Notes under the pieces: generated by a model | The model's input: the letters and a program-made list of their open reading frames with translations, nothing else | Told to the model about the DNA's origin: nothing | The model's database searches: none | Sequence record: LR756504.1 | Reading direction: 5' to 3' (one strand) | Length of the DNA: 64,000 bases | Translations under genes and position numbers: made by a program | Shown here: one piece after another, positions 9,751-58,696 of the stretch | How positions within the stretch are numbered: position 1 is the stretch's first letter | Layout of the letters: each line of letters starts with the position of its first letter

Positions 9751-9754
9751 AATA

Positions 9755-9786
9755 CAAAAATAACATAATTTATCTAAATTTCCAAA
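9755..9786 (-). promoter_or_regulatory. Bacteroidota-type sigma70 promoter (-33/-7)
   Basis: TTTG-20 nt-TATTTTTG-tatt-ATG. Confidence 0.75.
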
Positions 9787-9810
9787 TAATGAAGCATTTT
9801 ATTTAAATTA

Positions 9811-9842
9811 TTTGTATTTGTCTACAAAAAATATTACCTTTG
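9811..9842 (+). promoter_or_regulatory. Bacteroidota-type sigma70 promoter (-33/-7)
   Basis: TTTG-20 nt-TACCTTTG-tatc-ATG. Confidence 0.75.
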
Positions 9843-9846
9843 TATC

Positions 9847-10419
9847 ATGTCAAATATTATAGAAGATAAAGATTATATATTGGTAAACATTGAAAACGCA
9901 AAATTCAATGTTGAAGGCATTTTAGAAAAAATGCTTGATAAATCTTATTTGAAATATAAAATTTTTAATAATAGATTTACTATCTTTTTTAAAGATGGTG
10001 GATTTTTTGGGCATGGTTTGAGTGAATTGATTAAGTATGCTGAAAATGATGGTACTTGGTATTCTAATACATGGAACTGTATTCTTGGTACAGAGCCATA
10101 TACAGGAAGATTGCGTTCTTTATATTATGATGAATTTGTATTTTTGCTTTCCGAAGATTTAATTCAATTTGATGATTTTGAGTTGTTGACTTCTGATGAT
10201 ATTTGGAAAAATTTTGATAATTATATTGAAGCTAAAGAAACTCCTTTCTTAAAATCTCTTATGGATTGTAAAAATAAAGCCGATTTAAGAAAGGAGTATA
10301 GAAAGCTTGTTATGGAATATCATCCTGATAAAACAGGTAGCGATAACGAGCAAATTAGACAAATTACAGCAACTTATTTGAGACTTGTAAAACAAGTTAA
10401 TAGTCTTAAAACATTTTAA
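9847..10419 (+). CDS. Protein with C-terminal J (DnaJ) domain
   Basis: DLRKEYRKLVMEYHPDKTG...IRQITATY; HPD motif. Confidence 0.85.
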   Translation: MSNIIEDKDYILVNIENAKFNVEGILEKMLDKSYLKYKIFNNRFTIFFKDGGFFGHGLSELIKYAENDGTWYSNTWNCILGTEPYTGRLRSLYYDEFVFLLSEDLIQFDDFELLTSDDIWKNFDNYIEAKETPFLKSLMDCKNKADLRKEYRKLVMEYHPDKTGSDNEQIRQITATYLRLVKQVNSLKTF

Positions 10420-10493
10420 TAAATATTACGAAATATATTGAAAAATTATGACATATACACCATTTATATAAAAAATATTTTATATATAGAAAT

Positions 10494-11081
10494 ATGAAGT
10501 TAAGTGAATATGCAAAGGAATTAGGAGTTAGTTATAGAACAGTTTTTAGATGGTTTCAAGAGAATAGACTACCAGATGATGTTATATCTAAACAAACACC
10601 ATCAGGAACAATAATAATTGAGAAGATTGTTGATAATTCTCATTTCGAACAAAAGAATATTTTTATTTATTGTAGGGTGTCATCTTACGAAAAAAAAGAT
10701 GATTTAAATAGACAAATAAAACGCTGTGAAGATTATTGTATATCTAGTGGTTATAAAATAACTAAAGTATTTAAAGAAATTGGTTCAGGTATGAATGATA
10801 ATAGAACACAATTAACAAAAATGTTAAATTCGAATCCAAATATAATAGTAATTGAAAATAAAGATAGAATTACAAGATTCGGATTTAATTATCTTAATTT
10901 ACTATTATCTAAAATGAATTGTAAAATAGACATTATAAATGTTGAAAATAATAATGAAAAGGATTTAAATAAAGATTTGATTTCAATTATATCATCTTTC
11001 TGTTGTAGATTGTATGGTATGAGGAAAGGTTATAATAAAGCAAAAAGTATTAAAGATAAAATTGAAAACAATAATATTTAA
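10494..11081 (+). CDS. tnpA: IS607 TnpA serine recombinase with N-terminal HTH
   Basis: MKLSEYAKELGVSYRTVFRWF HTH; IYCRVSS catalytic motif; ENKDRITRFGF; CCRLYGMR. Confidence 0.95.
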   Translation: MKLSEYAKELGVSYRTVFRWFQENRLPDDVISKQTPSGTIIIEKIVDNSHFEQKNIFIYCRVSSYEKKDDLNRQIKRCEDYCISSGYKITKVFKEIGSGMNDNRTQLTKMLNSNPNIIVIENKDRITRFGFNYLNLLLSKMNCKIDIINVENNNEKDLNKDLISIISSFCCRLYGMRKGYNKAKSIKDKIENNNI

Positions 11082-12489: not shown

Positions 12490-12500
12490 TAACTCTTTAA
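12350..12500 (+). ncRNA. Putative omegaRNA scaffold overlapping the tnpB 3' end
   Basis: Hairpins atagatttaaat/atttaaatctat (12358-12404), tccga/tcgga (12404-12424), tttttact/agtaaaaa (12448-12464); position typical of TnpB omegaRNA. Confidence 0.5.
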
Positions 12501-12745
12501 ATACTATAGCTTGTAGTTATTATAAATTGCTTTCTTGAATATACAGTAATTAATATAATTTTGTGAAAATTATATTTTTCTTTAAATGATTTTATTAGAA
12601 CTTTTCCGTTAAAATTATTTTTTATAAACTTTTCAAAGTCTGAAAAAGTAAAATAATAAGCATTATCCTCATACCATGGTGGTATAGCAGTTTTCATTTT
12701 TTGTTCCAATCTTGTGTGTAAAGCCTTTTTTATCTCTCTATCCAT
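12497..12745 (-). CDS. Hypothetical protein
   Basis: Class-2 promoter TAAACTTC-14 nt-TATAAT, 5 nt before ATG. Confidence 0.7.
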   Translation of the reverse strand: MDREIKKALHTRLEQKMKTAIPPWYEDNAYYFTFSDFEKFIKNNFNGKVLIKSFKEKYNFHKIILITVYSRKQFIITTSYSI

Positions 12746-12825
12746 ATCTAATTATACTCAAAATATTATAGAAGTTTAAAAACAGATATATAAATTGTGG
12801 AATGACTAAAAAATAATAATAAATT

Positions 12826-13272: not shown

Positions 13273-13277
13273 TAATA

Positions 13278-13688
13278 TTATTTAGCTATACTTTCATATA
13301 AAGAAGAATCAATATCCTCTTTCAAAGATTTTATTATTGAAAGAGGTATTTTAAATTCCATAGATTGAACAAATTTTATTAAGTATGCTTTAAATTTACT
13401 ATCAGTAAATTTACCACCACCTAAAATATATTGAGCATAAGCTTCTTTAATATGAAGATTTTCGAATTCCGATGTTCTGATATAATTTTCAATAACATGA
13501 AATTTATTAGATGGAATTATATCAAAGTGGATAACTAAAGAAGCTGTTAGTATCTCTTCTTGTTCTTTTTCGATTGAAGATAATTTAGAATTTTTATATG
13601 CTTTTTCTATTAAAGGAGTCATACCCAATTTGTTGGGCTTATCAAATAATTGGTCATATAGTATATCTAAAGGCTCTGTAAATTTCAT
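13278..13688 (-). CDS. Hypothetical protein
   Basis: ATGA-coupled to upstream gene. Confidence 0.75.
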   Translation of the reverse strand: MKFTEPLDILYDQLFDKPNKLGMTPLIEKAYKNSKLSSIEKEQEEILTASLVIHFDIIPSNKFHVIENYIRTSEFENLHIKEAYAQYILGGGKFTDSKFKAYLIKFVQSMEFKIPLSIIKSLKEDIDSSLYESIAK

Positions 13689-14317
13689 GAGTTGTGTTGC
13701 TTTATTTCATCTTCAGTAGATTGTAGAAATTCAATAATTTGTTTTCCTTTTGTTATAGTTGATATAACAGTAATGTATACGCCTTTTTCTATAGGTGCTA
13801 CATCTATAAGTAATTCATTTGGATAAATATTTATAATATTATCATTTGAAAATATACAGAGTGTAAATGATTTATCATCACAATCTTGAATTTGACCAAT
13901 AGATTTAACAACTATAGGTTCAGGTTTATAAAAGCCAAATATTCTAATCTGTCTTTCACTCAATTTATCAAAAGATGTATTAGGAAACCCTTTACCCATC
14001 TTTTTATTGTGTATTTCTTCCCAACCTTCTATGTATATTTTACCATAACTACTAACTTTTTTAACTTTAGCTGGTTTTGTTATATCAACTGTTTTTGGAT
14101 TAAATTTATCAACATAATATTTATGATATTTTGATTTTAATAAAATCATATCACCTTTACCAATTAAAGTATTAATCACAACTTTTTTATGTACTCTTTC
14201 GACTCTACTACTATCAGATAGATGTTGAGAATCAAAATTACTTCTTTGTACTCTTTCCACTTTATTATTAGCATAAAAAGATTCACCTTTTAATGCATCA
14301 CTCCAAGCATCACTCAT
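13685..14317 (-). CDS. Hypothetical late protein
   Basis: TAAATATATA 3 nt upstream of ATG. Confidence 0.75.
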   Translation of the reverse strand: MSDAWSDALKGESFYANNKVERVQRSNFDSQHLSDSSRVERVHKKVVINTLIGKGDMILLKSKYHKYYVDKFNPKTVDITKPAKVKKVSSYGKIYIEGWEEIHNKKMGKGFPNTSFDKLSERQIRIFGFYKPEPIVVKSIGQIQDCDDKSFTLCIFSNDNIINIYPNELLIDVAPIEKGVYITVISTITKGKQIIEFLQSTEDEIKQHNS

Positions 14318-14319
14318 TT

Positions 14320-14655
14320 TTATATATTTATCAAATAACTAAATGTAATATAACCTACTTCCATTTTCAATTGTTTGGAAATTTCTTCGCAAATATTAAA
14401 ACTTGGTTGAAGAATAATTCCAAAATAGTGTGATTCTGAGTTCTTCTTCAAATAATATTCTTTTTTATCAGTAAATTCTTCTATTGAAATTCTTGTTTCA
14501 AGAATTCTAAAATGATTAGATGATATTCGTTGACCATCAGCTTGAATTACTAATGGTGTCAACATGCCTTTAACATCAATTTCTTTTCCTCGCATCATTG
14601 CTACAACAATCTCTTTAGCAAATTCTGTTGAAGTTTGTATAGAAACATTTTTCAT
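14320..14655 (-). CDS. Hypothetical early protein (start revised to MKNVSIQ)
   Basis: TTTG-20 nt-TATATTTG at 14684-14715; the ORF-track start is TTG. Confidence 0.7.
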   Translation of the reverse strand: MKNVSIQTSTEFAKEIVVAMMRGKEIDVKGMLTPLVIQADGQRISSNHFRILETRISIEEFTDKKEYYLKKNSESHYFGIILQPSFNICEEISKQLKMEVGYITFSYLINI

Positions 14656-14777
14656 TTTTTTATGATTAAATATCAATTTAACCCAAATATAATTAAAAAT
14701 ATGATAATATGCAAAATTTTATATAAAAATATTATTTAATCAAAAAAATAATACATTTTCAGAATTATATATAACTT

Positions 14778-15518
14778 ATGAAATATTTAAAGCTTTTTGA
14801 AGATTATTCTAACCCCATGTTAGAACAACGTAAAGATATGTTATCATTACGTAATAATTTAGATACTTATTTTAAAGAACATCATCCAGAATTAAAAATT
14901 ACGTTTGATATAAGAGGTGAATATCCAGAAGAATATTTAGGTGATTATATAGAAATTACTAGTGCAGATATTAAAATGACATTATCAACGACACATGAAG
15001 GTAAAATATTTGCTGATTATGGTGATGAAGATGATAGAGAAATATTTGATAAAACTGATGTTGATAATATAATATTTATGATAGAAGAACAATTTCGTGT
15101 TAATGAAAATGTTTCAGATTGGGACGATGAAGAGGAAGAGGAAGATGATTTAAGCATTATGTTTGAAACCATAGAATTAGATGATGATGCTATAGAATAT
15201 GGCTTTGAAAATGGTTATATATTTCACATTGGTAAAATCATAGATTATTTATCTAAACACGGTATAAATGGTGTACAAGTGAAAGATTTTAAAGGTAAAT
15301 CTATTGATACCGCTATGGGTGGGACTGACATTATTATTACAATTAAAATTCCAACTACAGATAAAGAAACTTTAATTAAAATAAAAAATGACTTGGAAAG
15401 ATTTGAATATTTTGAATCAGTAAAAATTACTAAAAATAGTATTAAAATATCGTATTCTGCGGATTCTATTTTGGTATATTTTCAACCTGAGATTTTTCTA
15501 AATGAACACGATTTATAA
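14778..15518 (+). CDS. Putative virion-internal protein, two modules
   Basis: MKYLKLFEDY; internal VNENVSDWDDEEEEEDDL; TTATATATA 4 nt upstream. Confidence 0.6.
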   Translation: MKYLKLFEDYSNPMLEQRKDMLSLRNNLDTYFKEHHPELKITFDIRGEYPEEYLGDYIEITSADIKMTLSTTHEGKIFADYGDEDDREIFDKTDVDNIIFMIEEQFRVNENVSDWDDEEEEEDDLSIMFETIELDDDAIEYGFENGYIFHIGKIIDYLSKHGINGVQVKDFKGKSIDTAMGGTDIIITIKIPTTDKETLIKIKNDLERFEYFESVKITKNSIKISYSADSILVYFQPEIFLNEHDL

Positions 15519-15746
15519 TCCATTTTTAAGTATTCTAAGCTTTCTATTTAGAATACTAATTCTATCTTTGTTTCCAATCATTCTCCCACGAATATTTTCT
15601 CTATATCCATAAGAAGCTCCTTTAGCTATATTTAAATGAAAACTATCTGATATAAATTTTTCAGTTAATAGTTTAATCTCTTTATTAATACACTTAATTT
15701 CAGATATATTAATAATATGGTAATATAAATTAAGAATTTTTTTCAT
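15513..15746 (-). CDS. Hypothetical protein
   Basis: 77-aa ORF overlapping upstream gene. Confidence 0.65.
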   Translation of the reverse strand: MKKILNLYYHIINISEIKCINKEIKLLTEKFISDSFHLNIAKGASYGYRENIRGRMIGNKDRISILNRKLRILKNGL

Positions 15747-16032
15747 TTATTTTACTTATCCAATTTAATCTAACTTGTTCAACAAATACTCTAAATTTAG
15801 TATAATTTTCATTATATGCAAAATCAGAACCTTTTTTAACACCTTGAAATTCAAAATATTCAAAGAAGAATGAATCACACAATTTATCCAATCTTAGAAA
15901 AATTCCATGATTTGCATATGAACCATTATCAGGATTTATAAACCAATTATTAAAATTTGTCACATTAAATATCTCTTCTATACTTTTTATAGAAGTTTTA
16001 TTTTGTGATTTTTTAAACAGATTTTTAAACAT
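15730..16032 (-). CDS. Hypothetical early protein
   Basis: Host-type promoter 4 nt upstream. Confidence 0.75.
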   Translation of the reverse strand: MFKNLFKKSQNKTSIKSIEEIFNVTNFNNWFINPDNGSYANHGIFLRLDKLCDSFFFEYFEFQGVKKGSDFAYNENYTKFRVFVEQVRLNWISKINEKNS

Positions 16033-16036: not shown

Positions 16037-16068
16037 CAAATTTAACAAAAATAATAGATAAATCCAAA
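16037..16068 (-). promoter_or_regulatory. Bacteroidota-type sigma70 promoter
   Basis: TTTG-20 nt-TAAATTTG-taat-ATG. Confidence 0.75.
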
Positions 16069-18200: not shown

Positions 18201-18229
18201 AAAACTTTTTATTTCATTTTTACTATAAT
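18201..18229 (+). promoter_or_regulatory. Class-2 promoter
   Basis: AAAACTTTT-14 nt-TATAAT, ATG 5 nt later. Confidence 0.6.
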
Positions 18230-18234: not shown

Positions 18235-18390
18235 ATGAAAGTTGTTATATTATCTGTAATATTGGGATTGTGTTTAAATGGATGTATAATATCTAGTAAT
18301 TCGCAGCTGCCTAATTCGGCATATAAAGTTAAAATAAAAAGACATAAGTCAGAAGAATATAAGAGATATTATTATGGAAAAGGAGTATAA
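18235..18390 (+). CDS. Small lipoprotein (not in ORF track)
   Basis: MKVVILSVILGLCLNGC signal peptide with LNG-C lipobox; 51 aa. Confidence 0.7.
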   Translation: MKVVILSVILGLCLNGCIISSNSQLPNSAYKVKIKRHKSEEYKRYYYGKGV

Positions 18391-24622: not shown

Positions 24623-24698
24623 ATTAAACTTTTAATGAATCTATCAAATATACCAATAAATGTGCGAAATTACAAGAAAAATTAATAATATATAATCT

Positions 24699-25127
24699 AT
24701 GAAATATTTTAGAACATTTGAACTATTTGATTCTGATGAATTGAAAGCTCAACACGAGATAGAATTTATTAAAGGAGAAATTGATAAAAATGAAATAACT
24801 AAAGGTGGTATACAACTATCTGATGCTATAGCATTAAATAATGCCATTATAGCTGAAGTTCCAGTATTTGCTTATGGAAGTCCCAATGTTCAGAGTGATT
24901 TCATATCATATGAATTTAAACACGATGATATTAAATTTTTAATTGGTATTTCAACAGAAGCTAAGAACGTTGATAAATTTCCTACAGTTGTTAAAATTAT
25001 GGTTAATGATGTAGAAGATAAAGTGAAATCAAATGTATTCGATTTTACTGGTTTAATTGGACAATTATTAATTTTTCAAAGAGAATTTGAAGGAAATATT
25101 ACAAAAATTATTCCCCAAAATAATTAA
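24699..25127 (+). CDS. Putative virion-internal protein (CTS-like N-terminus)
   Basis: MKYFRTFELF; TAATATATA (24686-24694) 4 nt upstream. Confidence 0.6.
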   Translation: MKYFRTFELFDSDELKAQHEIEFIKGEIDKNEITKGGIQLSDAIALNNAIIAEVPVFAYGSPNVQSDFISYEFKHDDIKFLIGISTEAKNVDKFPTVVKIMVNDVEDKVKSNVFDFTGLIGQLLIFQREFEGNITKIIPQNN

Positions 25128-25145: not shown

Positions 25146-25394
25146 TTAATTTATTTTTTCAAATCTATCTTCAATTAAATTAATTGCTTGATTATCAGAT
25201 AAGTATAAAAGTTCTTCTATACTGATTCTTAAATCACTATTTTTTAAATCCATTTCTAATTGTTCTGATGCTATTTCATATGCATCTTCAAATGGATAAC
25301 CTTTTGGAAATAATGCTATATTTACTGTATCATGCTGTTTTTTTATTTGTTCTGCACGAATTTTAAGGTAAATTTGCTTATGTTTATCTTCCAT
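25146..25394 (-). CDS. Hypothetical early protein
   Basis: TTTG-20 nt-TAACTTTG-taat-ATG (25399-25430). Confidence 0.75.
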   Translation of the reverse strand: MEDKHKQIYLKIRAEQIKKQHDTVNIALFPKGYPFEDAYEIASEQLEMDLKNSDLRISIEELLYLSDNQAINLIEDRFEKIN

Positions 25395-25544
25395 ATTACA
25401 AAGTTAATGAAAATATTTATTTTTTCCAAATTGAAAGGAATATTTTTAGATATATAATTTTAACTATATGTTCTGAGCTTAAAAAGCTTTGGAGTTATTA
25501 CGGTAACTAAAGAATATGTAGCCTAAAAAATAAGTTTAAGGACT

Positions 25545-27385: not shown

Positions 27386-27477
27386 GTGGATAAATATAGA
27401 TAAATAAAATAAGAAAACCAAAAATTATAGAAAAGATTCATTTTTATATATAAACTACTTAAAAATTGTATAATTTA

Positions 27478-31918: not shown

Positions 31919-31945
31919 AATATATAAGTAAAATATATTCATTTA

Positions 31946-33598: not shown

Positions 33599-33646
33599 AA
33601 ATCACTTACTGTTTTTTAATATATAAATAAAATAGGTATAGATTTA

Positions 33647-41764: not shown

Positions 41765-41816
41765 GATTTTAACTTAATTTATACAAAAATAATTAAAATA
41801 TTTTAAATAAACAAAT

Positions 41817-41942: not shown

Positions 41943-41995
41943 TTCTAACTGAGAACTTTTCTTTCTTTTCATTCCATATATATTCGATTTATTAT

Positions 41996-45672: not shown

Positions 45673-45703
45673 TTTGAAATAACGAAATAATTCTGTAAAT
45701 TTG
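45673..45703 (+). promoter_or_regulatory. Bacteroidota-type sigma70 promoter
   Basis: TTTG-19 nt-TAAATTTG-tat-ATG. Confidence 0.75.
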
Positions 45704-47480: not shown

Positions 47481-47753
47481 ATGGATATAATATCTTTAAG
47501 AAATAAAAGAAGCTCTGAAAAGATAGTGAAAACTTCTATTTCGGAAGTATTAAGAATAAATATAGATAAATTAGATACATTAAATAAAAATTCAATACTA
47601 TATGAAGAATTAAATATAGACGAACTCGACTTAATAGAAATAATAATGTTAATTGAAAGAAGAATGAATGTTATTTTTAAAGATGATGAAGTCGAAAAAA
47701 TTTTAACAGTAGGTGATATTTATAACTATGTTCAACAAAAAATCAAACGTTAA
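47481..47753 (+). CDS. Second ACP-fold protein, Ser-to-Glu at the phosphopantetheine site
   Basis: ELNIDELDLIEIIMLIERRMNVIFKDDEVEKILTVGDIYNYV. Confidence 0.85.
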   Translation: MDIISLRNKRSSEKIVKTSISEVLRINIDKLDTLNKNSILYEELNIDELDLIEIIMLIERRMNVIFKDDEVEKILTVGDIYNYVQQKIKR

Positions 47754-48304
47754 TGAATCAAAATTTCAAAAAAGATTTCAGAAAAAAACAACAAGAAAAT
47801 AAACACAGAATTAATTCATATATTACTACACATGAAATAAGATTAGTTGGTGATAATATTGAACAAGGAGTTTATTCTAATAGAGAAGCTTTAAGATTAG
47901 CTCAAGAATTACATTTAGATTTAGTTGAAATATCACCTAATGCAAACCCTCCCGTTTGTAGAATAGTAGATTATCAGAAATTTTTATATGAACAGAAAAA
48001 AAGAGAAAAAGAAAATGTTCAAAAACAAAAGCTGATTAATAAAGAGCTTAAAGAAATTCGTTTTACTGCTAATACAGATGAAAATGATGTTGAAGTAAAA
48101 AAGAAGAAAATAATTGAATTCTTGGAAAAAGGACACAAAGTTAAAACTCTTGTTGTTTTTAAAGGTAGAGAAATACAACATAAAGAAAGGGGTGAATATC
48201 TTCTTTTAAGTTTAGCTAACGATATTCAAGAAGTTGGAAAAATTGATAGTTTGCCTAAATTAGAAGGTAAAAATATGCATATGATGATAAGTCCAAAAAA
48301 GTAA
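47753..48304 (+). CDS. infC: Translation initiation factor IF3
   Basis: HRIN...EIRLVG, LDLVEISPNANPPVCRIVDYQKFLYEQKK, KEIRF, FKGRE, PKLEGK; no thrS/rpmI/rplT neighbours. Confidence 0.97.
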   Translation: MNQNFKKDFRKKQQENKHRINSYITTHEIRLVGDNIEQGVYSNREALRLAQELHLDLVEISPNANPPVCRIVDYQKFLYEQKKREKENVQKQKLINKELKEIRFTANTDENDVEVKKKKIIEFLEKGHKVKTLVVFKGREIQHKERGEYLLLSLANDIQEVGKIDSLPKLEGKNMHMMISPKK

Positions 48305-48324: not shown

Positions 48325-48355
48325 TTTGTAAAGTAAATTAATTTTGTTATATTTG
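48325..48355 (+). promoter_or_regulatory. Bacteroidota-type sigma70 promoter
   Basis: TTTG-19 nt-TATATTTG-tcct-ATG. Confidence 0.75.
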
Positions 48356-48359: not shown

Positions 48360-48701
48360 ATGAGTAAATATTTATCATATTCCGAAAATTTTAAACAATT
48401 AGTTAAAGGTGATTTTATAGTACTTGAATGTATGGATGAAATTCCAGATAAAGCATTTCCCATACAAAAAAGTACTATTCAAAAATGGACAGTATCACAA
48501 TCCGATGCTAAAGGGTTTACCATGTCCCGTAAAATTAAAGGACTTCCAAAGCAAACAATCACGATGTATAATATATTCATTAAAGATAATATATTCATTT
48601 CTTTCCAATCAATGTTTATGCCTTATAATTGTAATTTTAAGGTGTCTATTCAAAAAAAGAGCGATAAAGTTAATACATTAAAAACATTATTCAATAGATA
48701 A
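48360..48701 (+). CDS. Hypothetical early protein
   Basis: 113-aa ORF behind a host-type promoter. Confidence 0.75.
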   Translation: MSKYLSYSENFKQLVKGDFIVLECMDEIPDKAFPIQKSTIQKWTVSQSDAKGFTMSRKIKGLPKQTITMYNIFIKDNIFISFQSMFMPYNCNFKVSIQKKSDKVNTLKTLFNR

Positions 48702-48756: not shown

Positions 48757-48765
48757 TAATATATA
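48757..48765 (+). promoter_or_regulatory. Late-type promoter motif
   Basis: TAATATATA-gaac-ATG. Confidence 0.6.
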
Positions 48766-52068: not shown

Positions 52069-52345
52069 ATACAATTTCTTTTATTTTCTTTTTAGTTACT
52101 TTATGTGGATTGCTTTTATTTCTATCAGATATAATAAGATTAGATAAATATATGAAGTCTATTATTGAGACTCCCCAACATAAATAAATGAACCAAATAG
52201 GAATTCCATGTTCAACTTTCGCAAATGTCATTATTGATATGAAAGGTGCTAATGACATAAATATGTATATACATATAGTTATAATACCATATAACAATTG
52301 AAATGGTTTTACTATAAGCATATTGTATAATTTTTTAAACATCAT
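52046..52345 (-). CDS. Small 2-TM membrane protein
   Basis: Hydrophobic segments; ATGA-coupled to the methyltransferase. Confidence 0.7.
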   Translation of the reverse strand: MMFKKLYNMLIVKPFQLLYGIITICIYIFMSLAPFISIMTFAKVEHGIPIWFIYLCWGVSIIDFIYLSNLIISDRNKSNPHKVTKKKIKEIVYEQEEKK

Positions 52346-53136
52346 ACCTTTCCATATTTTTTTAATCTTTCTGTAATTATTTCACAATACTCTACAGATA
52401 ACTCAGATCCTATATAATTTCTATTATTAAGTAATGCTACTTTAGCTGTAGTACCACTACCACTAAAAGGATCATAAACAACATCACCATCGTTTGACCA
52501 TGATAATATATGATCTTTTGCAAGTTCTTCTGGGAAAATAGCAGGATGTCCAAATGCTATATCATCCTTTGTTGAATACCCTTTACCAGTATTATACTTC
52601 CAAATATTATTTCTTGGAGAAAAATCAGGAATTGGTTTCATATCTCTTTCAATCAATTCACCATTTTTATTTCTAACTTTTGCTTTTCCAAAACTTGTCC
52701 ACCCAGCCCATCTATTGGGTTTATCACAAATAAGTTTTGCTTTATTTGGTTTACCTTTGCTAAATACAAACATATATTCGAATATTTGAGAATATCTATT
52801 ACCATCTCTTCTAGCAGGAAATGATGTACCATTTTTTTCATATATCATAGTATCGTGTAAATTAAACCCACATTCCATAAAATATAATGCTTGTTTAAAT
52901 GATGTACCAGTTTCACTTCCTTTTACTACAGCATCACCAACTACCCATACTACGCAACCACCTGGTTTAGTAACTCTATATAATTCTTTTGCTATAGGTT
53001 CGAAATCAAATGAGTATCCTAAATATGATCTTAAATCATCGTAAGGAGGAGAAGTAACTGTTAAATCAATAAAGTTATCTTCCATCTTAGTCATAGTATC
53101 TAAACAATTCTCATTGTAAATCTTATTTAAATCCAT
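52342..53136 (-). CDS. DNA amino-methyltransferase (beta class, N4-mC/N6-mA)
   Basis: Motif IV VTSPPY, HPAIFP, motif I YDPFSGSGTT. Confidence 0.93.
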   Translation of the reverse strand: MDLNKIYNENCLDTMTKMEDNFIDLTVTSPPYDDLRSYLGYSFDFEPIAKELYRVTKPGGCVVWVVGDAVVKGSETGTSFKQALYFMECGFNLHDTMIYEKNGTSFPARRDGNRYSQIFEYMFVFSKGKPNKAKLICDKPNRWAGWTSFGKAKVRNKNGELIERDMKPIPDFSPRNNIWKYNTGKGYSTKDDIAFGHPAIFPEELAKDHILSWSNDGDVVYDPFSGSGTTAKVALLNNRNYIGSELSVEYCEIITERLKKYGKV

Positions 53137-53141
53137 TTTAA

Positions 53142-53966
53142 TTATTCACTTTTAGTTTTTATTAAATTTTCTCTAAAAGTTTTAATTTTAACATTAGATA
53201 AATAGCAATATTCTGGATTAATTTCAAAACCAATATATTTTCTATTCAACTCTATACAAGCAATTGCTGTAGTACCACTTCCCATGAATGGGTCCAATAT
53301 AACATCATCAACTTTAGATGTAGTTTCAATTAAAGGCTTTATTAAAGATAATGGAAATGATGCTTGATGCTCACCAAATGCATGTACACTTGTTCGTATT
53401 ACATCTCTATGATTTCCCAACTTTTTAGCAAGTGGTAAATCAAAATAATATTTTCTTGATTTAACAAAATGAAATATATGTTCGTAAACAGGATACCTTC
53501 TATCGGCTGAGTGTACTGGTATAGGATTTGATTTTTCCCAAATTAATTTGTTTCTTAAAATCCAACCTTGTTCTTGCATACCTATAGCAACACGTTCAGG
53601 TATCATTAAAAGCTGTTTATGTTGAAGCCATTTACCATCTTGTTTCGCTATCTTATGTTCTTTATAATGTTCATCAGTTTTTCTTTTATACTTTCCAGTA
53701 TTTCTTGAAAATCCTTTTGTTCCAAAATATACATCACCTATATTTAAATAAAAACTACCATCTTTAGCTAACACTCTTTTTAATTTTTCTGTATATGTTA
53801 GAAAATTTTCAACATATTCTTTTGGGTGAATTTCTCTACCAACAGTTTCATTACCATATACTCTACAATTAAAATATGGCGGTGATGTAATAATTAGATT
53901 AATACTATTATCTTCTAATTTATCCATTAGTTCAAAACAATCCCCACAAGTAATAGTATTTATCAT
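53142..53966 (-). CDS. Second DNA amino-methyltransferase (start revised to MINTITCGD)
   Basis: ITSPPY, HQASFP, LDPFMGSGTT. Confidence 0.93.
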   Translation of the reverse strand: MINTITCGDCFELMDKLEDNSINLIITSPPYFNCRVYGNETVGREIHPKEYVENFLTYTEKLKRVLAKDGSFYLNIGDVYFGTKGFSRNTGKYKRKTDEHYKEHKIAKQDGKWLQHKQLLMIPERVAIGMQEQGWILRNKLIWEKSNPIPVHSADRRYPVYEHIFHFVKSRKYYFDLPLAKKLGNHRDVIRTSVHAFGEHQASFPLSLIKPLIETTSKVDDVILDPFMGSGTTAIACIELNRKYIGFEINPEYCYLSNVKIKTFRENLIKTKSE

Positions 53967-53967
53967 A

Positions 53968-55284
53968 TTAGTTTGTAATTGGTACTTTTTTCTCAAATAA
54001 TTTTTTAAACACTGTCCATATTTCATTTATTTCTTTTATGGATTTCATTGCTAAATTTGGATTCTCTGTGGCGACTGGTCTATATGCTTTCCATAAATCT
54101 GATTTAATTTTAGTAAAACCATTATTAGGAATTTCTATATATGCCATATATTGTAATAAAGGCATCATAGTATTTAATAATTCCGCTGATGCTTTAGCAT
54201 CAGATTTATCCCACACATCACCATCAGATGCTTGACAAACATAAACGTTCCATTCAGATGAGAATCTTTCTTGCATTATTTTTATAGCTAATTCTAATGC
54301 TGGTTTAATTTTAGTACCGCCATTTTCTTTAGAATTAAAGAATGCTTCTTCATTTACTTCTTTAGCTTCTGTATGATGTTGAATGAATACTATTTCAACA
54401 TTAGGATATTGTTTTGATAAAAATAAATACAATAATGTAAAAAATCTTCTAGCAATATCTTTTTCTTTTTTACCCATTGAACCAGAAATATCCATAATAC
54501 AAAACATTACTGCTTGTGTGTTAGGTACAGGCTTAGGTTCAAAATTCTTATATGATAAATCTTTATCATCTAAATATGGAATTGATTTTAACTGCTTTTC
54601 AGTATTTTCAATCTCTAACATTAAATAATTTATTCTATCTGAATCAGTATTACTTTTTAATAATTCTGATTCCAATTCCTGTTTTAATTTTTTTAATTTC
54701 TCTTCAATAGAAACTTGCATCCCTATTCTTCTAGCTAAAGAATTCTTATAAGATTTAACCATATCCATAGAAGAGAATGGTCCATCAGTTTTAAAACCGT
54801 GTCTCTTATATTTTTTAGCATCTTCACTCATTAAATACTTTTTTGCTAAATCTGGAAGTTCTAAATCATCAAAAAAGTAATTTAAAAATTCATCCTTCGA
54901 AATAGAAATTATAAATTCATCTTCACCCACACTTGGGTCATTAGAACCCTTTCCTTTACCACTTCCTTTTCCTCCTGATGAGGGTGGTTTAGGTATTTGA
55001 TCACCTTCTACGAATTTTGATGTTTTAACTTCAGCTGGATTACCTGGAAGAATTCTATGCTTAGTTCCTTTAGAATTATCATAAACAAATGTAGGTTCTT
55101 CTATACCTTTAATTGGTACTTTAATAGAACCATTATTATTAATATCTTTAATTGATTGATTATTTAATACATTAGGAATGTTATTCTTAATTTGTTCTTC
55201 AACACGTTTTAAGAATTTATTTCTATTTGTTATTGATTTCCCCTTGCTATTAAGCCTTCTGTCGATTATAAAACTTCTAGACAT
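53968..55284 (-). CDS. yeaH: YeaH/YhbH (DUF444) vWA-domain protein
   Basis: IDRRLNSKGKS, ISKDEFLNYFFDDLELPDL, MFCIMDISGSM, QHHTEAKEV, QASDGD. Confidence 0.93.
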   Translation of the reverse strand: MSRSFIIDRRLNSKGKSITNRNKFLKRVEEQIKNNIPNVLNNQSIKDINNNGSIKVPIKGIEEPTFVYDNSKGTKHRILPGNPAEVKTSKFVEGDQIPKPPSSGGKGSGKGKGSNDPSVGEDEFIISISKDEFLNYFFDDLELPDLAKKYLMSEDAKKYKRHGFKTDGPFSSMDMVKSYKNSLARRIGMQVSIEEKLKKLKQELESELLKSNTDSDRINYLMLEIENTEKQLKSIPYLDDKDLSYKNFEPKPVPNTQAVMFCIMDISGSMGKKEKDIARRFFTLLYLFLSKQYPNVEIVFIQHHTEAKEVNEEAFFNSKENGGTKIKPALELAIKIMQERFSSEWNVYVCQASDGDVWDKSDAKASAELLNTMMPLLQYMAYIEIPNNGFTKIKSDLWKAYRPVATENPNLAMKSIKEINEIWTVFKKLFEKKVPITN

Positions 55285-55510
55285 GTTTATCTACTTTTAT
55301 CGTTTATTATTTTAACAAAAAATAGATTAAAGTTTTAAAATTTTTTGAAGAATTTAATAATGGATTTATAATACACTTTAAAAAATGCAAGTACTCTGAT
55401 TAAAGTATATAGTTTGAAGCGTTTAACTAAAATACCTAACGTAACCAATATAAGAAATATACCAAACATAATGATAGTTTCATAAAGATTTACTATATAT
55501 ATTTAAAAAA

Positions 55511-55536
55511 ATAAAGGAAGTTTTAACTTCCTTTAT
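55511..55536. terminator. Intrinsic terminator
   Basis: ataaaggaagtt-tt-aacttcctttat. Confidence 0.8.
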
Positions 55537-55538
55537 AA

Positions 55539-56144
55539 TTATTTTATTTTTTTAAATAAAAAATTCAATCTTTCTAATAATTCTCTCACTGGCTCAGTTT
55601 CTATAGTTACAGTAGGTTCAGATGTCGCAAGTATGGTATCTAATTGCTTTAATTTTTGGTTAATTTCCGACTTTACCTGATTAACTCTGTTTCTGTCAGA
55701 ATTTGTATTATTTTCAACTTTAGAATTTGATGGAATTCTCAATGTTATTTTTTCTTGTAATTTCAACATTTCACTAAAAGACATTACATGCTTTCTTTCG
55801 GACATTTCCATTTCTTCGTCAATATCATAATCATCTATATCAGATGGTTGTTCAATTATAGAAAGAATTTCTTCTTCGACATCTTTTCTCATATTCATGA
55901 TTCTATCATAATCAGGACTACTTTTTGATGGAGTAGTTTCAGAAGAAGCATATTTTTCCCATTCACCAATAAGTTCTTCTAATTTTAACTCTTGTGATGG
56001 TTCTATTTCAGTTAATAACGATGGTTTTGATACAACAAAATTATGAAGAGCATTATTTACTCTTCTCAGTAAATCGGCAGATTCTTTAACTAAACCTGTT
56101 TTTTTGACATTCTTTTTCATCTCTAATATAGAATTATATTTCAC
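55539..56144 (-). CDS. Hypothetical late protein (true start may be ATG 56120)
   Basis: TAATATATA abuts the GTG; internal KHVMSFSEMLKLQEK resembles the CTS-like motif. Confidence 0.7.
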   Translation of the reverse strand: MKYNSILEMKKNVKKTGLVKESADLLRRVNNALHNFVVSKPSLLTEIEPSQELKLEELIGEWEKYASSETTPSKSSPDYDRIMNMRKDVEEEILSIIEQPSDIDDYDIDEEMEMSERKHVMSFSEMLKLQEKITLRIPSNSKVENNTNSDRNRVNQVKSEINQKLKQLDTILATSEPTVTIETEPVRELLERLNFLFKKIK

Positions 56145-56165
56145 TATATATTAAAATAAAAAAAA

Positions 56166-56555
56166 TCACTTATTTCGCTTCTGTCTATTTGTGTCCATAT
56201 CTTCCTTTAACTGTCTATTTTTATCCACCGCCTTAGAAAAAAGTTCTGCTCCTACAAAATCTTTCCATAAAACATCAGAATTTGACATAAATGGATTAAT
56301 AATACTACCACCTGAAAATGATACTACATCAACCTCAACTTTATCATAACCCAATTCTGGTAATTTACCTGCTACAAATTCTATCCACCCAGGCATTCCA
56401 ACCCAATGACATTCACCATCAATGTATTCTTCACCATAATGTTTAATTAAATAGTTAACATCATTTTCAAAATCTTCTTTCGATTTTGTGTCATGTTGAA
56501 ATTGATAATATTGGTAATCATCCCAATATTCGTATTCTAATGTAAATATTCTCAT
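56166..56555 (-). CDS. Hypothetical protein
   Basis: 129-aa ORF; TATAAT 5 nt upstream. Confidence 0.75.
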   Translation of the reverse strand: MRIFTLEYEYWDDYQYYQFQHDTKSKEDFENDVNYLIKHYGEEYIDGECHWVGMPGWIEFVAGKLPELGYDKVEVDVVSFSGGSIINPFMSNSDVLWKDFVGAELFSKAVDKNRQLKEDMDTNRQKRNK

Positions 56556-56593
56556 AATTTATTATAGAAAAATTAAAAGTTTTAAAATAAAAT

Positions 56594-56626
56594 AAAAAAG
56601 GTGAACCTTTTAAAGTCCACCTTTTT
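56594..56626 (-). terminator. Terminator after prkA
   Basis: Minus strand AAAAAGGTGGAC...GTTCACCTTTTTT. Confidence 0.75.
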
Positions 56627-56651
56627 ACCTGTCAAACAAAAAATAAATAAA

Positions 56652-58589
56652 TTAACTCAAATCATGTTTATAAACTCTTACATACCATTCAACTATTAAT
56701 TGAATCTGTCTCTTAGTATATCCCAAGTTTTCCATTCTTGATATGAAGCTTTCGTGTTTCTTCTTATCATCAGTGCTATTTTTAGGTGAGAAAGAAATAA
56801 CAGGTAGCAAATCTTCTGTATTAGTGAAAATTCTCTTTTCTATAACAGTTCTTATTTTTTCAAAAGCATTCCATTTTGGAGATTTACCACTATTATTTGC
56901 TCTATATCTGTATGTAAAATTAACAGTTTCATGTCTGAAATCTTTAGGATTTACAATACCTGCTGGTTTCTCCATTTTCTCTAATTCCGAATTAAGAGTT
57001 TCTCTATTCATCATAGCATTAGTTTCAGGATCTCTAAAATCATTATCTTGAATCCAATTATCAGCATAAGCAACATATCTTTCAAATAGATTTTGACCAT
57101 AATCAGAATAAGATTCAACATAAGCTCTTTGAATTTCATTACCAATATATTGAACGTAATCAGAAACAATATGTGTTTTTAGATAATCTAAATATTTACC
57201 TTCTACTTCTTTTGCTAATTGTAATTTTTGCACTTCTTTTTCCAACACATAAAATAAATGAATTGGGTTAGCAGAAATTTCATGTTGATCATAATTAAAT
57301 ACTTTAGATAGAACTTTATAAGCAAAACGTGTTGATAAACCATTCATACCTTCATTCAAACCTGCATAATCTTTATATTCTTGTAATGATTTTGCTTTTG
57401 GATCTTTATCTTTTAAATTCTCACCATTATATACTCTAAGCTTAGAAAAAATATTCGAATTCTCAGGCTCAACCAAACGAGTCATGATAATAAACTTAGC
57501 AAGTAAATCAAGTGTCTTTGGTGCGCAAGACGCTTTTGATAATGATGAGTGTGCCAAAATCTTTTCGTAAATTTTTACTTCTTCATCAACACGTGAACAA
57601 TATGGTACTCTTACTACGTTAATACGATCTAAGAAAGCTTCATTCTTCTTATCTCTTACAAAGAGCTCCCATTCTGACTCATTCGAATGGGCCATGATAA
57701 TACCCTGGTATGGAATTGCGGGTAGCCCTTCAGTTCCTTTAAAATTTCCTTCTTGTGTTGCAGTTAATAATGGATGTAACGTTTTAATTGGAGCTTTAAA
57801 CATCTCAACAAACTCTAAGATTCCTTGGTTTGCTCTACACAAGCCGCCAGAATATGAATAGCAATCAGGATCATCTTGACTGAAATGTGCAAGTTTTCTA
57901 ATATCTACTTTACCAACAAGAGATGATATATCAGAATTGTTTTCATCACCTGGTTCTACTTTTGCTATTCCAACTTGATGTTGAATACTTGGATACATTT
58001 CAATTACTTTTATTTTAGATAAATCATAATCAATTTCATCTAATCTTTTAGTAAGCCACGGAGACATACAAGATGGAATATATCTTTTATTAATTCCGTA
58101 TTCATCCAATAACATTTTAGAATCTTCATCTGATGAGAAAATACCAAATGGTGATTCAAATACAGGTGATGTTTCTTCACCAACTTTAACCACATAAATA
58201 GGACATTTTTCCATCAAGCTTTTTATTTTCTCAGCTAAAGAAGATTTACCACCACCAACTGGACCCAAAAGATATAGAACTTGTTTCTTTTCTTCCAGGC
58301 CTTGTGAAGCATGTCTAAAGAAACCAACAATTTGTTCTATAGTATCTTCCATACCATAAAATTCTCTAAAAGCTGGATATCTTTTGATAATTTTATTGAA
58401 GAATAATCTAGATAATCTAGGATCATCTTTGGTATCTATAGTTTCTTCACTACCTATTGCTTCCAATAACCTCTCAGCAGGAAGCGAATACCATTTGTCT
58501 GATTTCTTACACAAGTCCAAATATTCTAGCAATGAAAATTCTTTTGGTACATGTAAGTGACGATTTTTGTAGTCTTTTAGTATTGACAT
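56652..58589 (-). CDS. prkA: PrkA/YeaG-family AAA+ ATPase
   Basis: Walker A GPVGGGKS, YSYSGGLCRANQGILEFVEMFKAP, C-terminal DLLPVISF...RMENLGYT. Confidence 0.96.
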   Translation of the reverse strand: MSILKDYKNRHLHVPKEFSLLEYLDLCKKSDKWYSLPAERLLEAIGSEETIDTKDDPRLSRLFFNKIIKRYPAFREFYGMEDTIEQIVGFFRHASQGLEEKKQVLYLLGPVGGGKSSLAEKIKSLMEKCPIYVVKVGEETSPVFESPFGIFSSDEDSKMLLDEYGINKRYIPSCMSPWLTKRLDEIDYDLSKIKVIEMYPSIQHQVGIAKVEPGDENNSDISSLVGKVDIRKLAHFSQDDPDCYSYSGGLCRANQGILEFVEMFKAPIKTLHPLLTATQEGNFKGTEGLPAIPYQGIIMAHSNESEWELFVRDKKNEAFLDRINVVRVPYCSRVDEEVKIYEKILAHSSLSKASCAPKTLDLLAKFIIMTRLVEPENSNIFSKLRVYNGENLKDKDPKAKSLQEYKDYAGLNEGMNGLSTRFAYKVLSKVFNYDQHEISANPIHLFYVLEKEVQKLQLAKEVEGKYLDYLKTHIVSDYVQYIGNEIQRAYVESYSDYGQNLFERYVAYADNWIQDNDFRDPETNAMMNRETLNSELEKMEKPAGIVNPKDFRHETVNFTYRYRANNSGKSPKWNAFEKIRTVIEKRIFTNTEDLLPVISFSPKNSTDDKKKHESFISRMENLGYTKRQIQLIVEWYVRVYKHDLS

Positions 58590-58696
58590 AATTAAATCTT
58601 TAAATATTTTTTGTTTGCACTTTTACTTTTATTAAAAAAAGTGAAAATGTTTGAAAAATATGTATTAAAAAATTAAGTTTTCCTAATATATACTAT

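What the first reader, a model, noticed from the sequence alone, without database searches (positions are those of the whole stretch)
9751..58696. All three promoter classes often put the start codon 3-5 nt downstream: a leaderless-mRNA programme
Seen: TAnnTTTG-N3/4-ATG (9750, 9847, 16032, 25394, 45707, 48360), TATAAT-N4/5-ATG (7391, 12745, 18235, 56555), ATATATA-N3-5-ATG (1121, 1145, 6153, 7273, 10494, 14317, 14778, 24699, 48770, 58697); no SD motifs evident. Established: the Bacteroidota -7 element lies just upstream of +1, and IF3 levels influence leaderless initiation. Inference: many phage mRNAs start at or next to the AUG, and phage IF3/EF-G may tune ribosomes for them.
Basis: partly seen in the sequence, partly recalled or inferred. 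Interest (0 to 1): 0.7.

Follow-up and report, generated by a model that had tools for sequence, protein, structure and literature searches.

The report
Promoters abutting start codons: leaderless mRNAs
In this 636-kb phage of Bacteroidota, about a third of recognisable promoters sit so close to the ATG that the mRNA should begin at the start codon, a mode that is rare in the host phylum and has not been reported for these phages, although no transcript 5' ends have been mapped.

Summary
The window is bases 62,001-126,000 of LR756504.1, a complete 636-kb 'Mahaphage' genome with a predicted Bacteroidota host. All 20 cited sites exist.

There are three promoter-like elements:
- A: TTTG-N19/20-TAnnTTTG, the host sigma-A type.
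- B: tTAATATATA.
- C: AAACTT-N15-17-TATAAT.

Each sits 3-6 nt from ATGs that open real ORFs, far more often than shuffles give. Genome-wide the counts are 24, 62 and 17 genes against 2.2, 7.1 and 0.06 expected.

Every class is bimodal: the promoter is either N3-6 or N15-40 from the ATG, with an almost empty zone between. Published Bacteroidota geometry (-7 element at -12..-5, 4-5 nt to the TSS) puts the A of ATG at +1 for class A. In class B the ATG replaces a conserved AAA at +5..+7.

About 32% of promoter-assigned first genes are predicted leaderless, against 3.7-5.5% measured in host-phylum bacteria and about 3% in my same-pipeline control. Three divergent 635-735-kb relatives show the same pattern. 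crAss001, B40-8 and a 484-kb huge phage do not.

The IF3/EF-G link is unsupported. The phage IF3 is canonical, and excess IF3 inhibits leaderless translation in E. coli. All of this is inferred from sequence only.

The parts
9755..9786 (-). Class A promoter (TTTG-N20-TATTTTTG), N4 to the ATG at 9750; gene 9370-9750 (126 aa)
9811..9842 (+). Class A promoter (TTTG-N20-TACCTTTG) with a TTGTAT-N4-(c)TACAA palindrome over the -33 box; N4 to the ATG at 9847; gene 9847-10419 (190 aa, DnaJ-domain)
16037..16068 (-). Class A promoter, N4 to the ATG at 16032; gene 15730-16032 (100 aa)
25399..25430 (-). Class A promoter, N4 to the ATG at 25394; gene 25146-25394 (82 aa)
45673..45703 (+). Class A promoter, N3 to the ATG at 45707; CCA-adding enzyme gene 45707-46867. 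It heads a same-strand run with no terminator that ends with IF3.
48325..48355 (+). Class A promoter, N4 to the ATG at 48360; gene 48360-48701 (113 aa)
1126..1140 (.). Back-to-back class B elements (TATATATAATATATA) inside the 23-nt spacer between divergent genes 693-1121(-) and 1145-1699(+); each is N4 from its own ATG
6140..6147 (+). Class B element, N5 to the ATG at 6153; gene 6153-6479
7278..7285 (-). Class B element, N4 to the ATG at 7273; gene 6752-7273
10481..10488 (+). Class B element, N5 to the ATG at 10494; resolvase-domain gene 10494-11081
14321..14328 (-). Class B element, N3 to the ATG at 14317; gene 13685-14317. The promoter is embedded in the 3' end of the upstream ORF.
14766..14773 (+). 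Class B element, N4 to the ATG at 14778; gene 14778-15518
24687..24694 (+). Class B element, N4 to the ATG at 24699; gene 24699-25127
41977..41984 (-).
48758..48765 (+). Class B element, N4 to the ATG at 48770; gene 48770-50137 (455 aa)
58685..58692 (+). Class B element, N4 to the ATG at 58697; gene 58697-59095
7359..7386 (+). Class C promoter (AAACTT-N16-TATAAT), N4 to the ATG at 7391, which opens only an 18-codon ORF
12751..12777 (-). Class C promoter (AAACTT-N15-TATAAT), N5 to the ATG at 12745; gene 12497-12745
18202..18229 (+). Class C promoter (AAACTT-N16-TATAAT), N5 to the ATG at 18235; 51-aa ORF 18235-18390
56561..56582 (-). Class C-like promoter (AAACTT-N10-TATAAT, off-consensus spacing), N5 to the ATG at 56555; gene 56166-56555
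27445..27452 (+). Leadered comparator: class B element N25 from the ATG at 27478 (1180-aa protein). Similar leadered class B elements lie at 31919-31926 (N19), 33618-33625 (N21), 56145-56152(-) (N24) and 59114-59121 (N20).
41784..41815 (-). Leadered comparator: class A promoter N19 from the ATG at 41764. Another lies at 14684-14715(-), N28 from 14655.
47753..48304 (+). Phage IF3 (183 aa, IF3_N + IF3_C). It has an ATG start that overlaps the upstream stop codon (TAATG) and is the last gene of the run that starts at the 45707 promoter.
3765..5891 (-). Phage EF-G (708 aa, all five EF-G domains). Its mRNA is leadered, with an A-rich upstream region preceded by a small ORF and a hairpin with a U-tract.

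Best explanation
The phage uses three promoter classes. In each class a large minority of promoters is placed so that transcription starts at, or within 1-2 nt of, the A of the start codon. The resulting 5'-AUG mRNAs have no leader and must be translated by the leaderless route: direct binding of the ribosome and initiator tRNA to a 5'-terminal AUG.

- Class A is the host Bacteroidota sigma-A promoter (TTTG-N19/20-TAnnTTTG) and probably drives early genes.
- Class B (tTAATATATA-N3-AAA) is a single -10-like element. It also precedes the large proteins without Pfam matches at 27.4-41.4 kb, which are probably virion proteins, so it is probably middle/late and read by a phage-modified or phage-encoded transcription apparatus.
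- Class C (AAACTT-N15-17-TATAAT) is a bipartite element whose reader is unknown.

The remaining promoters give short A-rich leaders of about 12-25 nt, the normal SD-independent Bacteroidota mode. Leaders of about 3-11 nt are avoided. I infer that this is because they offer neither a 5'-terminal AUG nor enough upstream RNA for 30S loading.

Shown here: the motifs, their spacing statistics, their promoter-like distribution, the absence of alternative starts, and recurrence in relatives. Inferred: the exact TSS (well grounded for class A, within about 2 nt for B and C), the mode of translation, and the temporal classes.
For: 1. Geometry. In F. johnsoniae the -7 element spans T-12 to G-5, with 4-5 nt to the TSS (PMC6847099; also -12 to -5 in PMC9723704). 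TAnnTTTG-N4-ATG therefore puts A at +1.
2. Enrichment. Class A has 24 genes at N3-5 (shuffle mean 2.2). Class B has 62 at N3-6 (shuffle mean 7.1). Class C has 17 at N3-7 (shuffle mean 0.06).
3. Two modes with a depleted zone in all three classes: p=1e-3, 2.5e-10 and 0.016.
4. Same element in both modes. Class B leadered promoters have A at 88-89% at +5..+7. In the leaderless ones ATG occupies exactly +5..+7, and +4 is a pyrimidine in 92%. Position -1 is a pyrimidine in 86% of leaderless genes against 60% of other genes.
5. Promoter-like distribution. Class B occurs at about 3.8 per strand-kb in divergent spacers against 0.38 in convergent ones. Class C occurs 36 times pointing to gene starts and once pointing to a gene end.
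6. No room for leaders. Divergent ATG-to-ATG spacers of 23, 32 and 44 nt are filled by two back-to-back promoters.
7. Start codons are sound. Only 6.8% of these genes have another in-frame ATG in codons 2-9. The CCA-adding enzyme's domain begins at residue 23, matching profile position 1.
8. SD-like motifs are depleted.
9. Contrast with the host phylum. 32% of promoter-assigned first genes are leaderless (80 of 250; 17 of 26 in the window). Measured rates are 3.7% in B. thetaiotaomicron and 5.5% in F. psychrophilum. The same pipeline gave 6 of 187 on 1.6 Mb of Cytophagales DNA.
10. Replication. The same ttTAATATATA-N4/5-ATG peak appears in LR756502.1, LR745206.1 and, more weakly, LR756501.1. 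Their EF-G is only 49-54% identical to this phage's.
Against: - No transcript 5' ends exist for this uncultured phage.
- For classes B and C the polymerase or sigma factor is unknown. With a canonical -10 to TSS distance the start could fall 1-2 nt away from the A.
- Genes were called with a simple longest-ORF, first-ATG rule.
- The count of leadered class A promoters includes chance TAnnTTTG matches, so the fractions are approximate.
- Leaderless status is not conserved between homologous genes of relatives (0 of 10 informative pairs), so there is no gene-specific constraint.
- 17 of the 62 class-B leaderless genes share an N-terminal peptide tag. Part of the N4 peak could therefore reflect spread of a promoter-plus-5'-end cassette, not independent selection.
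Confidence: 0.7

Rival explanations
1. For classes B and C only: the AT-rich elements next to the ATG are not promoters at those positions. They would be translation-initiation enhancers or RNA-processing sites, with transcripts starting further upstream, so the mRNAs are leadered or become leaderless only after cleavage.
For: Bacteroidota translation favours A/T-rich unstructured upstream regions (PMC6847099; PMC6028130). 20 genes internal to same-strand runs also carry an abutting element, so read-through transcripts must exist for some of them.
Against: The same extended element occurs at two discrete distances, and the ATG replaces the conserved AAA. A ribosome-binding element would be expected at one fixed distance. 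The motifs are strongly biased towards divergent spacers and point at gene starts. Spacers of 23-44 nt between divergent genes leave no upstream non-coding DNA for another promoter. Class C is bipartite with fixed N15-17 spacing, which is typical of polymerase recognition.
Confidence: 0.15
2. The annotated ATGs are not the real start codons. Translation would begin at a downstream codon, so the promoters give ordinary short leaders.
For: Starts were assigned by a first-ATG rule with no experimental support. 7391 and a few other abutting ATGs open only 18-25-codon ORFs.
Against: Only 4.9% of the genes have an in-frame ATG at codons 4-9, the position that would give a normal leader, against 7.4% of other genes. 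All 5 ATGs at TAnnTTTG-N4 and all 8 at ATATATA-N4 in the window open called genes. Genome-wide, ATG itself is enriched at N4: 48 of 478 ATATATA sites, against about 5-10 at neighbouring offsets. Domain boundaries fit the annotated N-termini.
Confidence: 0.05
3. One reading: the phage-encoded IF3 (and EF-G) adapt host ribosomes to favour leaderless phage mRNAs.
For: IF3 and EF-G are both encoded in the window. IF3 sits at the end of an operon headed by a leaderless class A promoter. IF3 concentration is known to modulate leaderless translation (PMC9031893).
Against: The known direction is the opposite: raised IF3 inhibits leaderless translation in E. coli. The phage IF3 aligns end to end with E. 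coli IF3, with both domains and the linker present (E=3e-44), and no special feature was seen. LR756508.1 also encodes EF-G but lacks the pattern. EF-G has no known role in start-site selection (my own knowledge).
Confidence: 0.1
4. Compositional chance in a 26% GC genome.
For: Bare TAnnTTTG-N4-ATG in the window is not above shuffles. Bare TATAAT has no spacing peak.
Against: The bipartite and extended forms exceed every shuffle. The distribution has two modes. The pattern recurs in relatives but not in crAss001 or B40-8.
Confidence: 0.02

Closest known systems
Leaderless-rich bacterial genomes (Deinococcus deserti, mycobacteria; GeneMarkS-2 'group C')
   Same: A -10-type promoter box lies a few nt upstream of the start codon of first genes in operons, there is no SD, and leadered genes coexist in the same genome (PMC6028130; PMC4007540 and 10.1101/857003 abstracts).
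   Different: This is a phage, in a host phylum where 90% of genomes are 'group B' (non-SD, A-rich leader) and measured leaderless rates are 3.7-5.5%. Three distinct promoter classes share the habit. The box-to-ATG distance is 3-6 nt, not the 6-8 nt reported for M. tuberculosis.
Bacteroidota sigma-A (sigma-ABfr) -33/-7 promoters
   Same: Class A matches TTTG/TAnnTTTG with 19-20 nt spacing and no G at the two n positions (TAHHTTTG).
   Different: In host bacteria the element usually lies about 20-50 nt from the start codon. Here 24 copies abut the ATG. A subset carries a TTGTAT-N4-ATACAA palindrome over the -33 box.
Phage lambda cI mRNA from PRM (the classic single leaderless phage transcript)
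   Same: A phage mRNA that begins with its AUG and is translated without a leader (PMC10491246 abstract; PMC9031893).
   Different: Lambda has one regulatory gene of this kind. Here about 100 genes (11% of the genome's genes) across promoter classes are predicted to be leaderless.
T4-type late promoters (single extended -10-like TATAAATA element, no -35); named from my own knowledge and not tested here
   Same: Class B is one AT-rich -10-like element with no detectable upstream box. It precedes the large proteins without Pfam matches at 27.4-41.4 kb, which are probably virion proteins.
   Different: The sequence differs (tTAATATATA-N3-AAA). No gp55- or gp33-like factor was looked for. T4 late mRNAs are leadered and carry SD sequences.

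Membership tests
Bacteroidota sigma-A (-33/-7) promoter (class A) | -7 element TAnnTTTG, no G at the nn positions (TAHHTTTG) | tested here: met
   All 6 window sites and all 24 genome sites match; nn is TT, CC, AA, AC, TA, TC and so on, never G (criterion from PMC6847099).
Bacteroidota sigma-A (-33/-7) promoter (class A) | -33 TTTG about 19-20 nt upstream of the -7 element | tested here: met
   6 of 6 window sites have it at N19-20. Genome-wide, 17 bipartite (TTTG-N18-21-TAnnTTTG) elements lie N3-5 from a gene start.
Bacteroidota sigma-A (-33/-7) promoter (class A) | Transcription starts 4-5 nt downstream of the -7 element | not testable with these tools
   No RNA data exist. Indirect support only: -1 is a pyrimidine and +1 is A.
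Bacteroidota sigma-A (-33/-7) promoter (class A) | Located in intergenic DNA and oriented towards gene starts | tested here: met
   About 2.4-3.0 per strand-kb towards starts, against 0.85-1.1 away from starts or in convergent spacers.
Leaderless mRNA | 5' end of the primary transcript within 0-5 nt of the start codon | not testable with these tools
   Inferred from promoter geometry. The phage is uncultured and no transcriptome is available.
Leaderless mRNA | No SD or other ribosome-binding leader upstream of the start codon | tested here: met
   The promoter occupies the upstream DNA. SD-like motifs occur in 0 of 89 window genes.
Leaderless mRNA | The promoter-adjacent codon is the real initiation codon | tested here: inconclusive
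   There are few alternative in-frame ATGs and domain boundaries fit, but there is no proteomic or ribosome-profiling evidence. ATG is the start in 100 of the 103 genes, but 96% of all genes also use ATG, so this does not discriminate.
Sigma-70-type -35/-10 promoter (class C) | -10 TATAAT and -35 TTGACA separated by 17 +/- 1 nt | tested here: not met
   TATAAT is present and the spacing is fixed (N15-17), but the upstream box is (TTTTA)AAACTT, not TTGACA. A generic sigma-70 scan finds no excess (27 found, 30.5 expected).
Bacterial IF3 (InfC) | N-terminal and C-terminal IF3 domains joined by a linker, alignable over the full length | tested here: met
   IF3_N E=2e-28, IF3_C E=3e-30. Residues 10-183 align to E. 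coli IF3 residues 5-178, E=3e-44.
Bacterial EF-G | GTPase domain plus domains II, III, IV and C | tested here: met
   All Pfam EF-G domains are present, E from 1e-14 to 8e-64. 63-67% identity to Cytophagales EF-G.

The most novel reading that the evidence does not exclude
The largest known phages (the 635-735-kb Mahaphages of Bacteroidota) run a deliberate two-mode expression programme. A large set of mRNAs is made leaderless from host-type and phage-type promoters, so it is translated by a route the host hardly uses and cannot easily regulate. The phage's own IF3, made from an early leaderless operon, shifts ribosome usage between the leaderless and short-leader sets as a temporal switch.
Probability: 0.12. 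Interest if true: 0.8.

Novelty: new variant of a known kind. Interest (0 to 1): 0.6.

Why it matters
Bacteroidota translate without Shine-Dalgarno pairing, and how their ribosomes pick start codons is still an open question. Huge phages of this phylum carry IF3, EF-G and other translation genes whose purpose is unknown.

If about 100 genes of a 636-kb phage really are leaderless, three things follow.
- Bacteroidota ribosomes can efficiently use 5'-terminal AUGs even though the hosts rarely do.
- Phage and host mRNAs differ in initiation route. That gives the phage-encoded initiation factors something to discriminate between and makes the question testable with simple reporters.
- Gene callers and RBS models for these phages should include a 'promoter at the start codon' class. 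The original description recorded only that SD motifs were missing and never mentions leaderless mRNAs.

The sharp avoidance of 3-11-nt leaders is also a natural readout of the minimal leader length for 30S loading in an SD-less system.

Tried and rejected
- IMG/VR scans with two window proteins returned only fragments of the same phage from the same metagenome. tblastn of two structural-block proteins against the phage collection found no relatives. Relatives were finally reached through EF-G.
- Ortholog-level conservation: among 48 homolog pairs with 150 kb of relatives, 0 of 10 informative pairs are leaderless in both genomes. The pattern is a genome style, not a conserved feature of particular genes.
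- I suspected that the recurrent ATG-AAA-TAY-TTA-AAA after class B promoters was an mRNA-level signal for leaderless translation. I rejected this because the bases vary synonymously and the conservation extends as a peptide (MKYLKLFEDF...).
- Bare TATAAT and the generic sigma-70 scan carry no signal.
- A possible ORF-definition artefact: stop codons inside AT-rich motifs could force the 'first ATG'. I rejected this because ATG itself, regardless of ORF calling, peaks at N4/N5, and the N5 peak is out of frame with any stop codon in the motif.
- Literature searches linking 'leaderless' to huge, jumbo or crAss-like phages, or to Cappable-seq of phages, found nothing relevant.

Full report
WHAT THE WINDOW IS. 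The 64-kb window (26% GC, no tRNAs) is identical to bases 62,001-126,000 of LR756504.1, an unannotated 636,363-bp 'uncultured phage'. Al-Shayeb et al. 2020 list the 636-kb genome among their four largest complete, circularised genomes. They place it in the 'Mahaphage' clade and predict a Bacteroidetes host (PMC7162821). The window encodes a full EF-G (3765-5891, minus strand), a canonical IF3 (47753-48304), a CCA-adding enzyme, a PrkA/DUF444/SpoVR operon, two DNA methylases and many small ORFs. The phage EF-G is 63-67% identical to EF-G of Cytophagales, which fits a Bacteroidota host.

CHECK OF THE OBSERVATION. All 20 cited sites carry the stated motif and spacing on the right strand.
- The six TAnnTTTG sites all have a TTTG 19-20 nt upstream, which makes them complete Bacteroidota sigma-A promoters.
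- The four TATAAT sites all have a (TTTTA)AAACTT box upstream, at N15-16 in three of them.

Window counts against dinucleotide-preserving shuffles:
- ATATATA-N4-ATG: 8 observed, 1.68 expected, 0/100 shuffles reach it.
- The bipartite class A form abutting ATG: 7 observed, 0.15 expected, 0/100.
- AAACTT-N15-17-TATAAT-N3-6-ATG: 3 observed, 0.04 expected, 0/100.
- Bare TAnnTTTG-N4-ATG: 5 observed, 2.63 expected, not significant alone.
- Bare TATAAT has no spacing peak.

All 5 ATGs at TAnnTTTG-N4 and all 8 at ATATATA-N4 in the window are starts of called genes. One cited site (7391) opens only an 18-codon ORF.

GENOME-WIDE TEST. I fetched the whole record and called 918 genes with a motif-blind rule: greedy longest ORFs, first ATG (92% coding, standard code).
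- Class A sits N3-5 from 24 gene starts (mononucleotide-shuffle mean 2.2, maximum 8).
- Class B (ATATATA) sits N3-6 from 62 (mean 7.1, maximum 16).
- Class C sits N3-7 from 17 (mean 0.06, maximum 1).

The main new result is that every class has two modes: a sharp mode at N3-6, an almost empty zone up to about N15, and a broad leadered mode at N15-40. Depletion of the zone gives p=1e-3, 2.5e-10 and 0.016. Among 486 first-genes-of-operon, 250 have a recognisable promoter. Of those, 80 (32%) abut the ATG, 4 fall in the zone and 166 are leadered. In the window the figures are 17 abutting and 9 leadered, out of 26.

ARE THESE PROMOTERS?
- All three motifs are enriched in divergent and tandem spacers, point towards gene starts and are scarce in convergent spacers. 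Class B occurs at about 3.8 per strand-kb in divergent spacers against 0.38 in convergent ones. Class C occurs 36 times towards gene starts and once towards a gene end.
- Class A leaderless promoters share an extended consensus, aataTTTGTAT-N4-ATACAAa...TAyCTTTGTATyATG.
- Class B has the extended form T-A-ATATATA. In its leadered copies there is a conserved AAA at +5..+7 after the motif (88-89% A). In the leaderless copies ATG occupies exactly +5..+7 and +4 is a pyrimidine in 92%. The same element is therefore used at two distances, and the start codon sits where the conserved, presumably initiating, A-tract sits.

WHERE IS +1?
- For class A this rests on published data. In F. johnsoniae the -7 element is T-12...G-5 and 4-5 nt separate it from the TSS (PMC6847099). 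F. psychrophilum gives the same -12 to -5 position (PMC9723704). N4 therefore makes the A of ATG +1. The N3 and N5 cases are within the reported play.
- Across all 103 genes, position -1 is a pyrimidine in 86%, against 60% of other genes. This fits the usual Y(-1)R(+1) start-site preference, which I cite from general knowledge.
- For classes B and C the polymerase or sigma factor is unknown, so +1 is uncertain by about 2 nt. Such mRNAs would still be functionally leaderless.

ARE THE ATGs REAL STARTS?
- Only 6.8% of the 103 genes have another in-frame ATG in codons 2-9, against 10.3% of other genes.
- ATG itself, independent of ORF calling, peaks at N4/N5 after ATATATA: 48 and 26 of 478 sites, against about 5-10 at neighbouring offsets.
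- Domain boundaries fit. PolyA_pol starts at residue 23 of the CCA-adding enzyme.
- Divergent gene pairs with ATG-to-ATG spacers of 23 nt (window 1121/1145), 32 nt and 44 nt are entirely filled by two back-to-back promoters, which leaves no room for leaders.
- SD-like motifs are depleted upstream of starts: 23 of 918 genes against 46 and 65 in control windows, and 0 of 89 in the window.

COMPARISON WITH HOSTS AND OTHER PHAGES.
- Measured short or absent leaders are rare in the phylum: 3.7% of 5' UTRs under 10 nt in B. thetaiotaomicron (PMC7366714), 5.5% leaderless in F. psychrophilum, and 13% with leaders of 10 nt or less in F. johnsoniae (87% exceed 10 nt).
- GeneMarkS-2 places 90% of Bacteroidetes in the non-leaderless 'group B' and uses a -10 box next to the start codon as the signature of leaderless transcription (PMC6028130).
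- My pipeline run on 1.6 Mb of Cytophagales DNA gave 6 of 187 TAnnTTTG-linked starts at N3-5 and almost none at N6-14. These loci are orthologous, so the counts are not independent.
- Fifty kb from each of four other huge phages that encode EF-G (49-54% identical to this one) were tested. The ATATATA-N4/5 peak is present in LR756502.1 (7+4), in LR745206.1 (9+2, plus 6 TAnnTTTG at N3-5) and more weakly in LR756501.1. It is absent from LR756508.1 (39% GC).
- crAss001 and B40-8, two cultured Bacteroides phages, have TAnnTTTG 19-47 nt from starts, with at most one case at N4.
- The habit therefore belongs to this huge-phage group, not to Bacteroidota phages in general. It is not conserved gene by gene (0 of 10 informative homolog pairs).

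MECHANISM PROPOSED.
- Class A is read by host RNAP-sigma-A and is concentrated in the first 130 kb of the record, so it is probably early.
- Class B occurs throughout the genome. It precedes the large proteins without Pfam matches at 27.4-41.4 kb, which are probably virion proteins, so it is probably middle/late and read by a phage-directed apparatus.
- Class C clusters at the two ends of the linearised circle and its reader is unknown.
- In each class the promoter either abuts the ATG, giving a 5'-AUG mRNA translated by the leaderless route, or gives an A-rich leader of about 12-25 nt, the phylum's normal SD-independent mode.
- I infer that the empty zone reflects leaders too long to present a terminal AUG and too short to load a 30S subunit.

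THE IF3/EF-G IDEA.
- The phage IF3 is canonical over its full length (E=3e-44 to E. coli IF3). It starts with ATG overlapping the upstream stop codon. It lies at the end of a same-strand run with no terminator that begins at the leaderless class A promoter of the CCA-adding gene.
- According to the review PMC9031893, excess IF3 inhibits leaderless translation and low levels can stimulate it. The default expectation is therefore opposite to 'tuning ribosomes for' leaderless mRNAs. A temporal switch is conceivable but is contradicted by the many leaderless class B genes.
- EF-G has a leadered mRNA and no known role in start selection.

NOVELTY.
- Leaderless mRNAs are well known: lambda cI, Deinococcus, actinobacteria and archaea.
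- What is new is their predicted abundance in a phage whose host phylum rarely uses them, across three promoter classes, with a clean two-mode leader distribution shared by the largest known phages.
- The source paper does not contain the word 'leaderless' and discusses only missing SD motifs and S1, S21, IF1 and IF3.
- Targeted literature searches found no prior report.
- The claim remains computational until transcript 5' ends are mapped.

Noticed in passing
window genes starting at 1121(-), 3513(+), 7273(-), 14778(+), 24699(+), 59142(+); 39 genes across LR756504.1: 39 of 918 proteins begin with a shared tag, MK[YH][LIFM][KR] extending to about MKYLKLFEDF, often followed by an acidic run. 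They are otherwise mostly unrelated: 17 of them fall into 15 BLASTP clusters. 28 of 39 have a class B promoter within 40 nt (background 19%), and 26 of 39 have [LIVF]xE within residues 5-14 (background 21%). The same MKYL start appears in relatives. It may be an N-terminal targeting or propeptide tag like the T4 capsid-targeting sequence with its LxE protease site. That comparison is from memory and was not tested.
   Followed up: partly
window 9812-9827 (+); about 22 sites genome-wide, mostly at 2-57 kb of the record: A palindrome, TTGTAT-N4-ATACAA, overlies the -33 box of a subset of class A promoters. The -7 element is always exactly 7 nt downstream, and the ATG is at N4 or N18-20. It may be an operator for a dimeric regulator or an extended -33 element.
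   Followed up: partly
window 5929-6058 (-), upstream of EF-G: A 23-codon ORF (6058-5987) is followed by a G+C-rich hairpin with a U-tract (about 5960-5929), about 35 nt before the EF-G start codon. The layout looks like a leader peptide with a terminator (an attenuator).
   Followed up: no
window 3765-5891 (-): The phage EF-G is closer to Cytophagales EF-G (63-67% identity) than to the EF-G of the other huge phages (49-54%). This suggests separate acquisitions or fast divergence.
   Followed up: no
window 50167-58589 (-): A PrkA kinase, a DUF444 (YeaH-like) protein and a SpoVR-like protein are encoded on one strand, with two adjacent N6/N4 DNA methyltransferases (52342-54026) between them. 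This is a bacterial stress/sporulation-type trio carried by a phage.
   Followed up: no
window 1145-1699 (+), plus a second unlocated member among the small ORFs: A 2H-phosphoesterase/LigT-like protein matches the anti-CBASS Acb1 family (E=6.5e-7). It is expressed from a class B promoter that abuts its ATG.
   Followed up: no
window 25346-25382 (+): A seventh complete class A promoter abuts an ATG (25380) that opens only 25 codons. It is antisense to, and overlaps, the start of gene 25146-25394(-). It could drive a small ORF or be a distal promoter for 25545(+).
   Followed up: no
window 47745-47760 (+): The phage IF3 starts with ATG overlapping the upstream stop codon (TAATG). E. coli infC instead uses an AUU start for autoregulation (from memory). 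If Bacteroidota infC behaves likewise, the phage copy would escape IF3 autoregulation.
   Followed up: no
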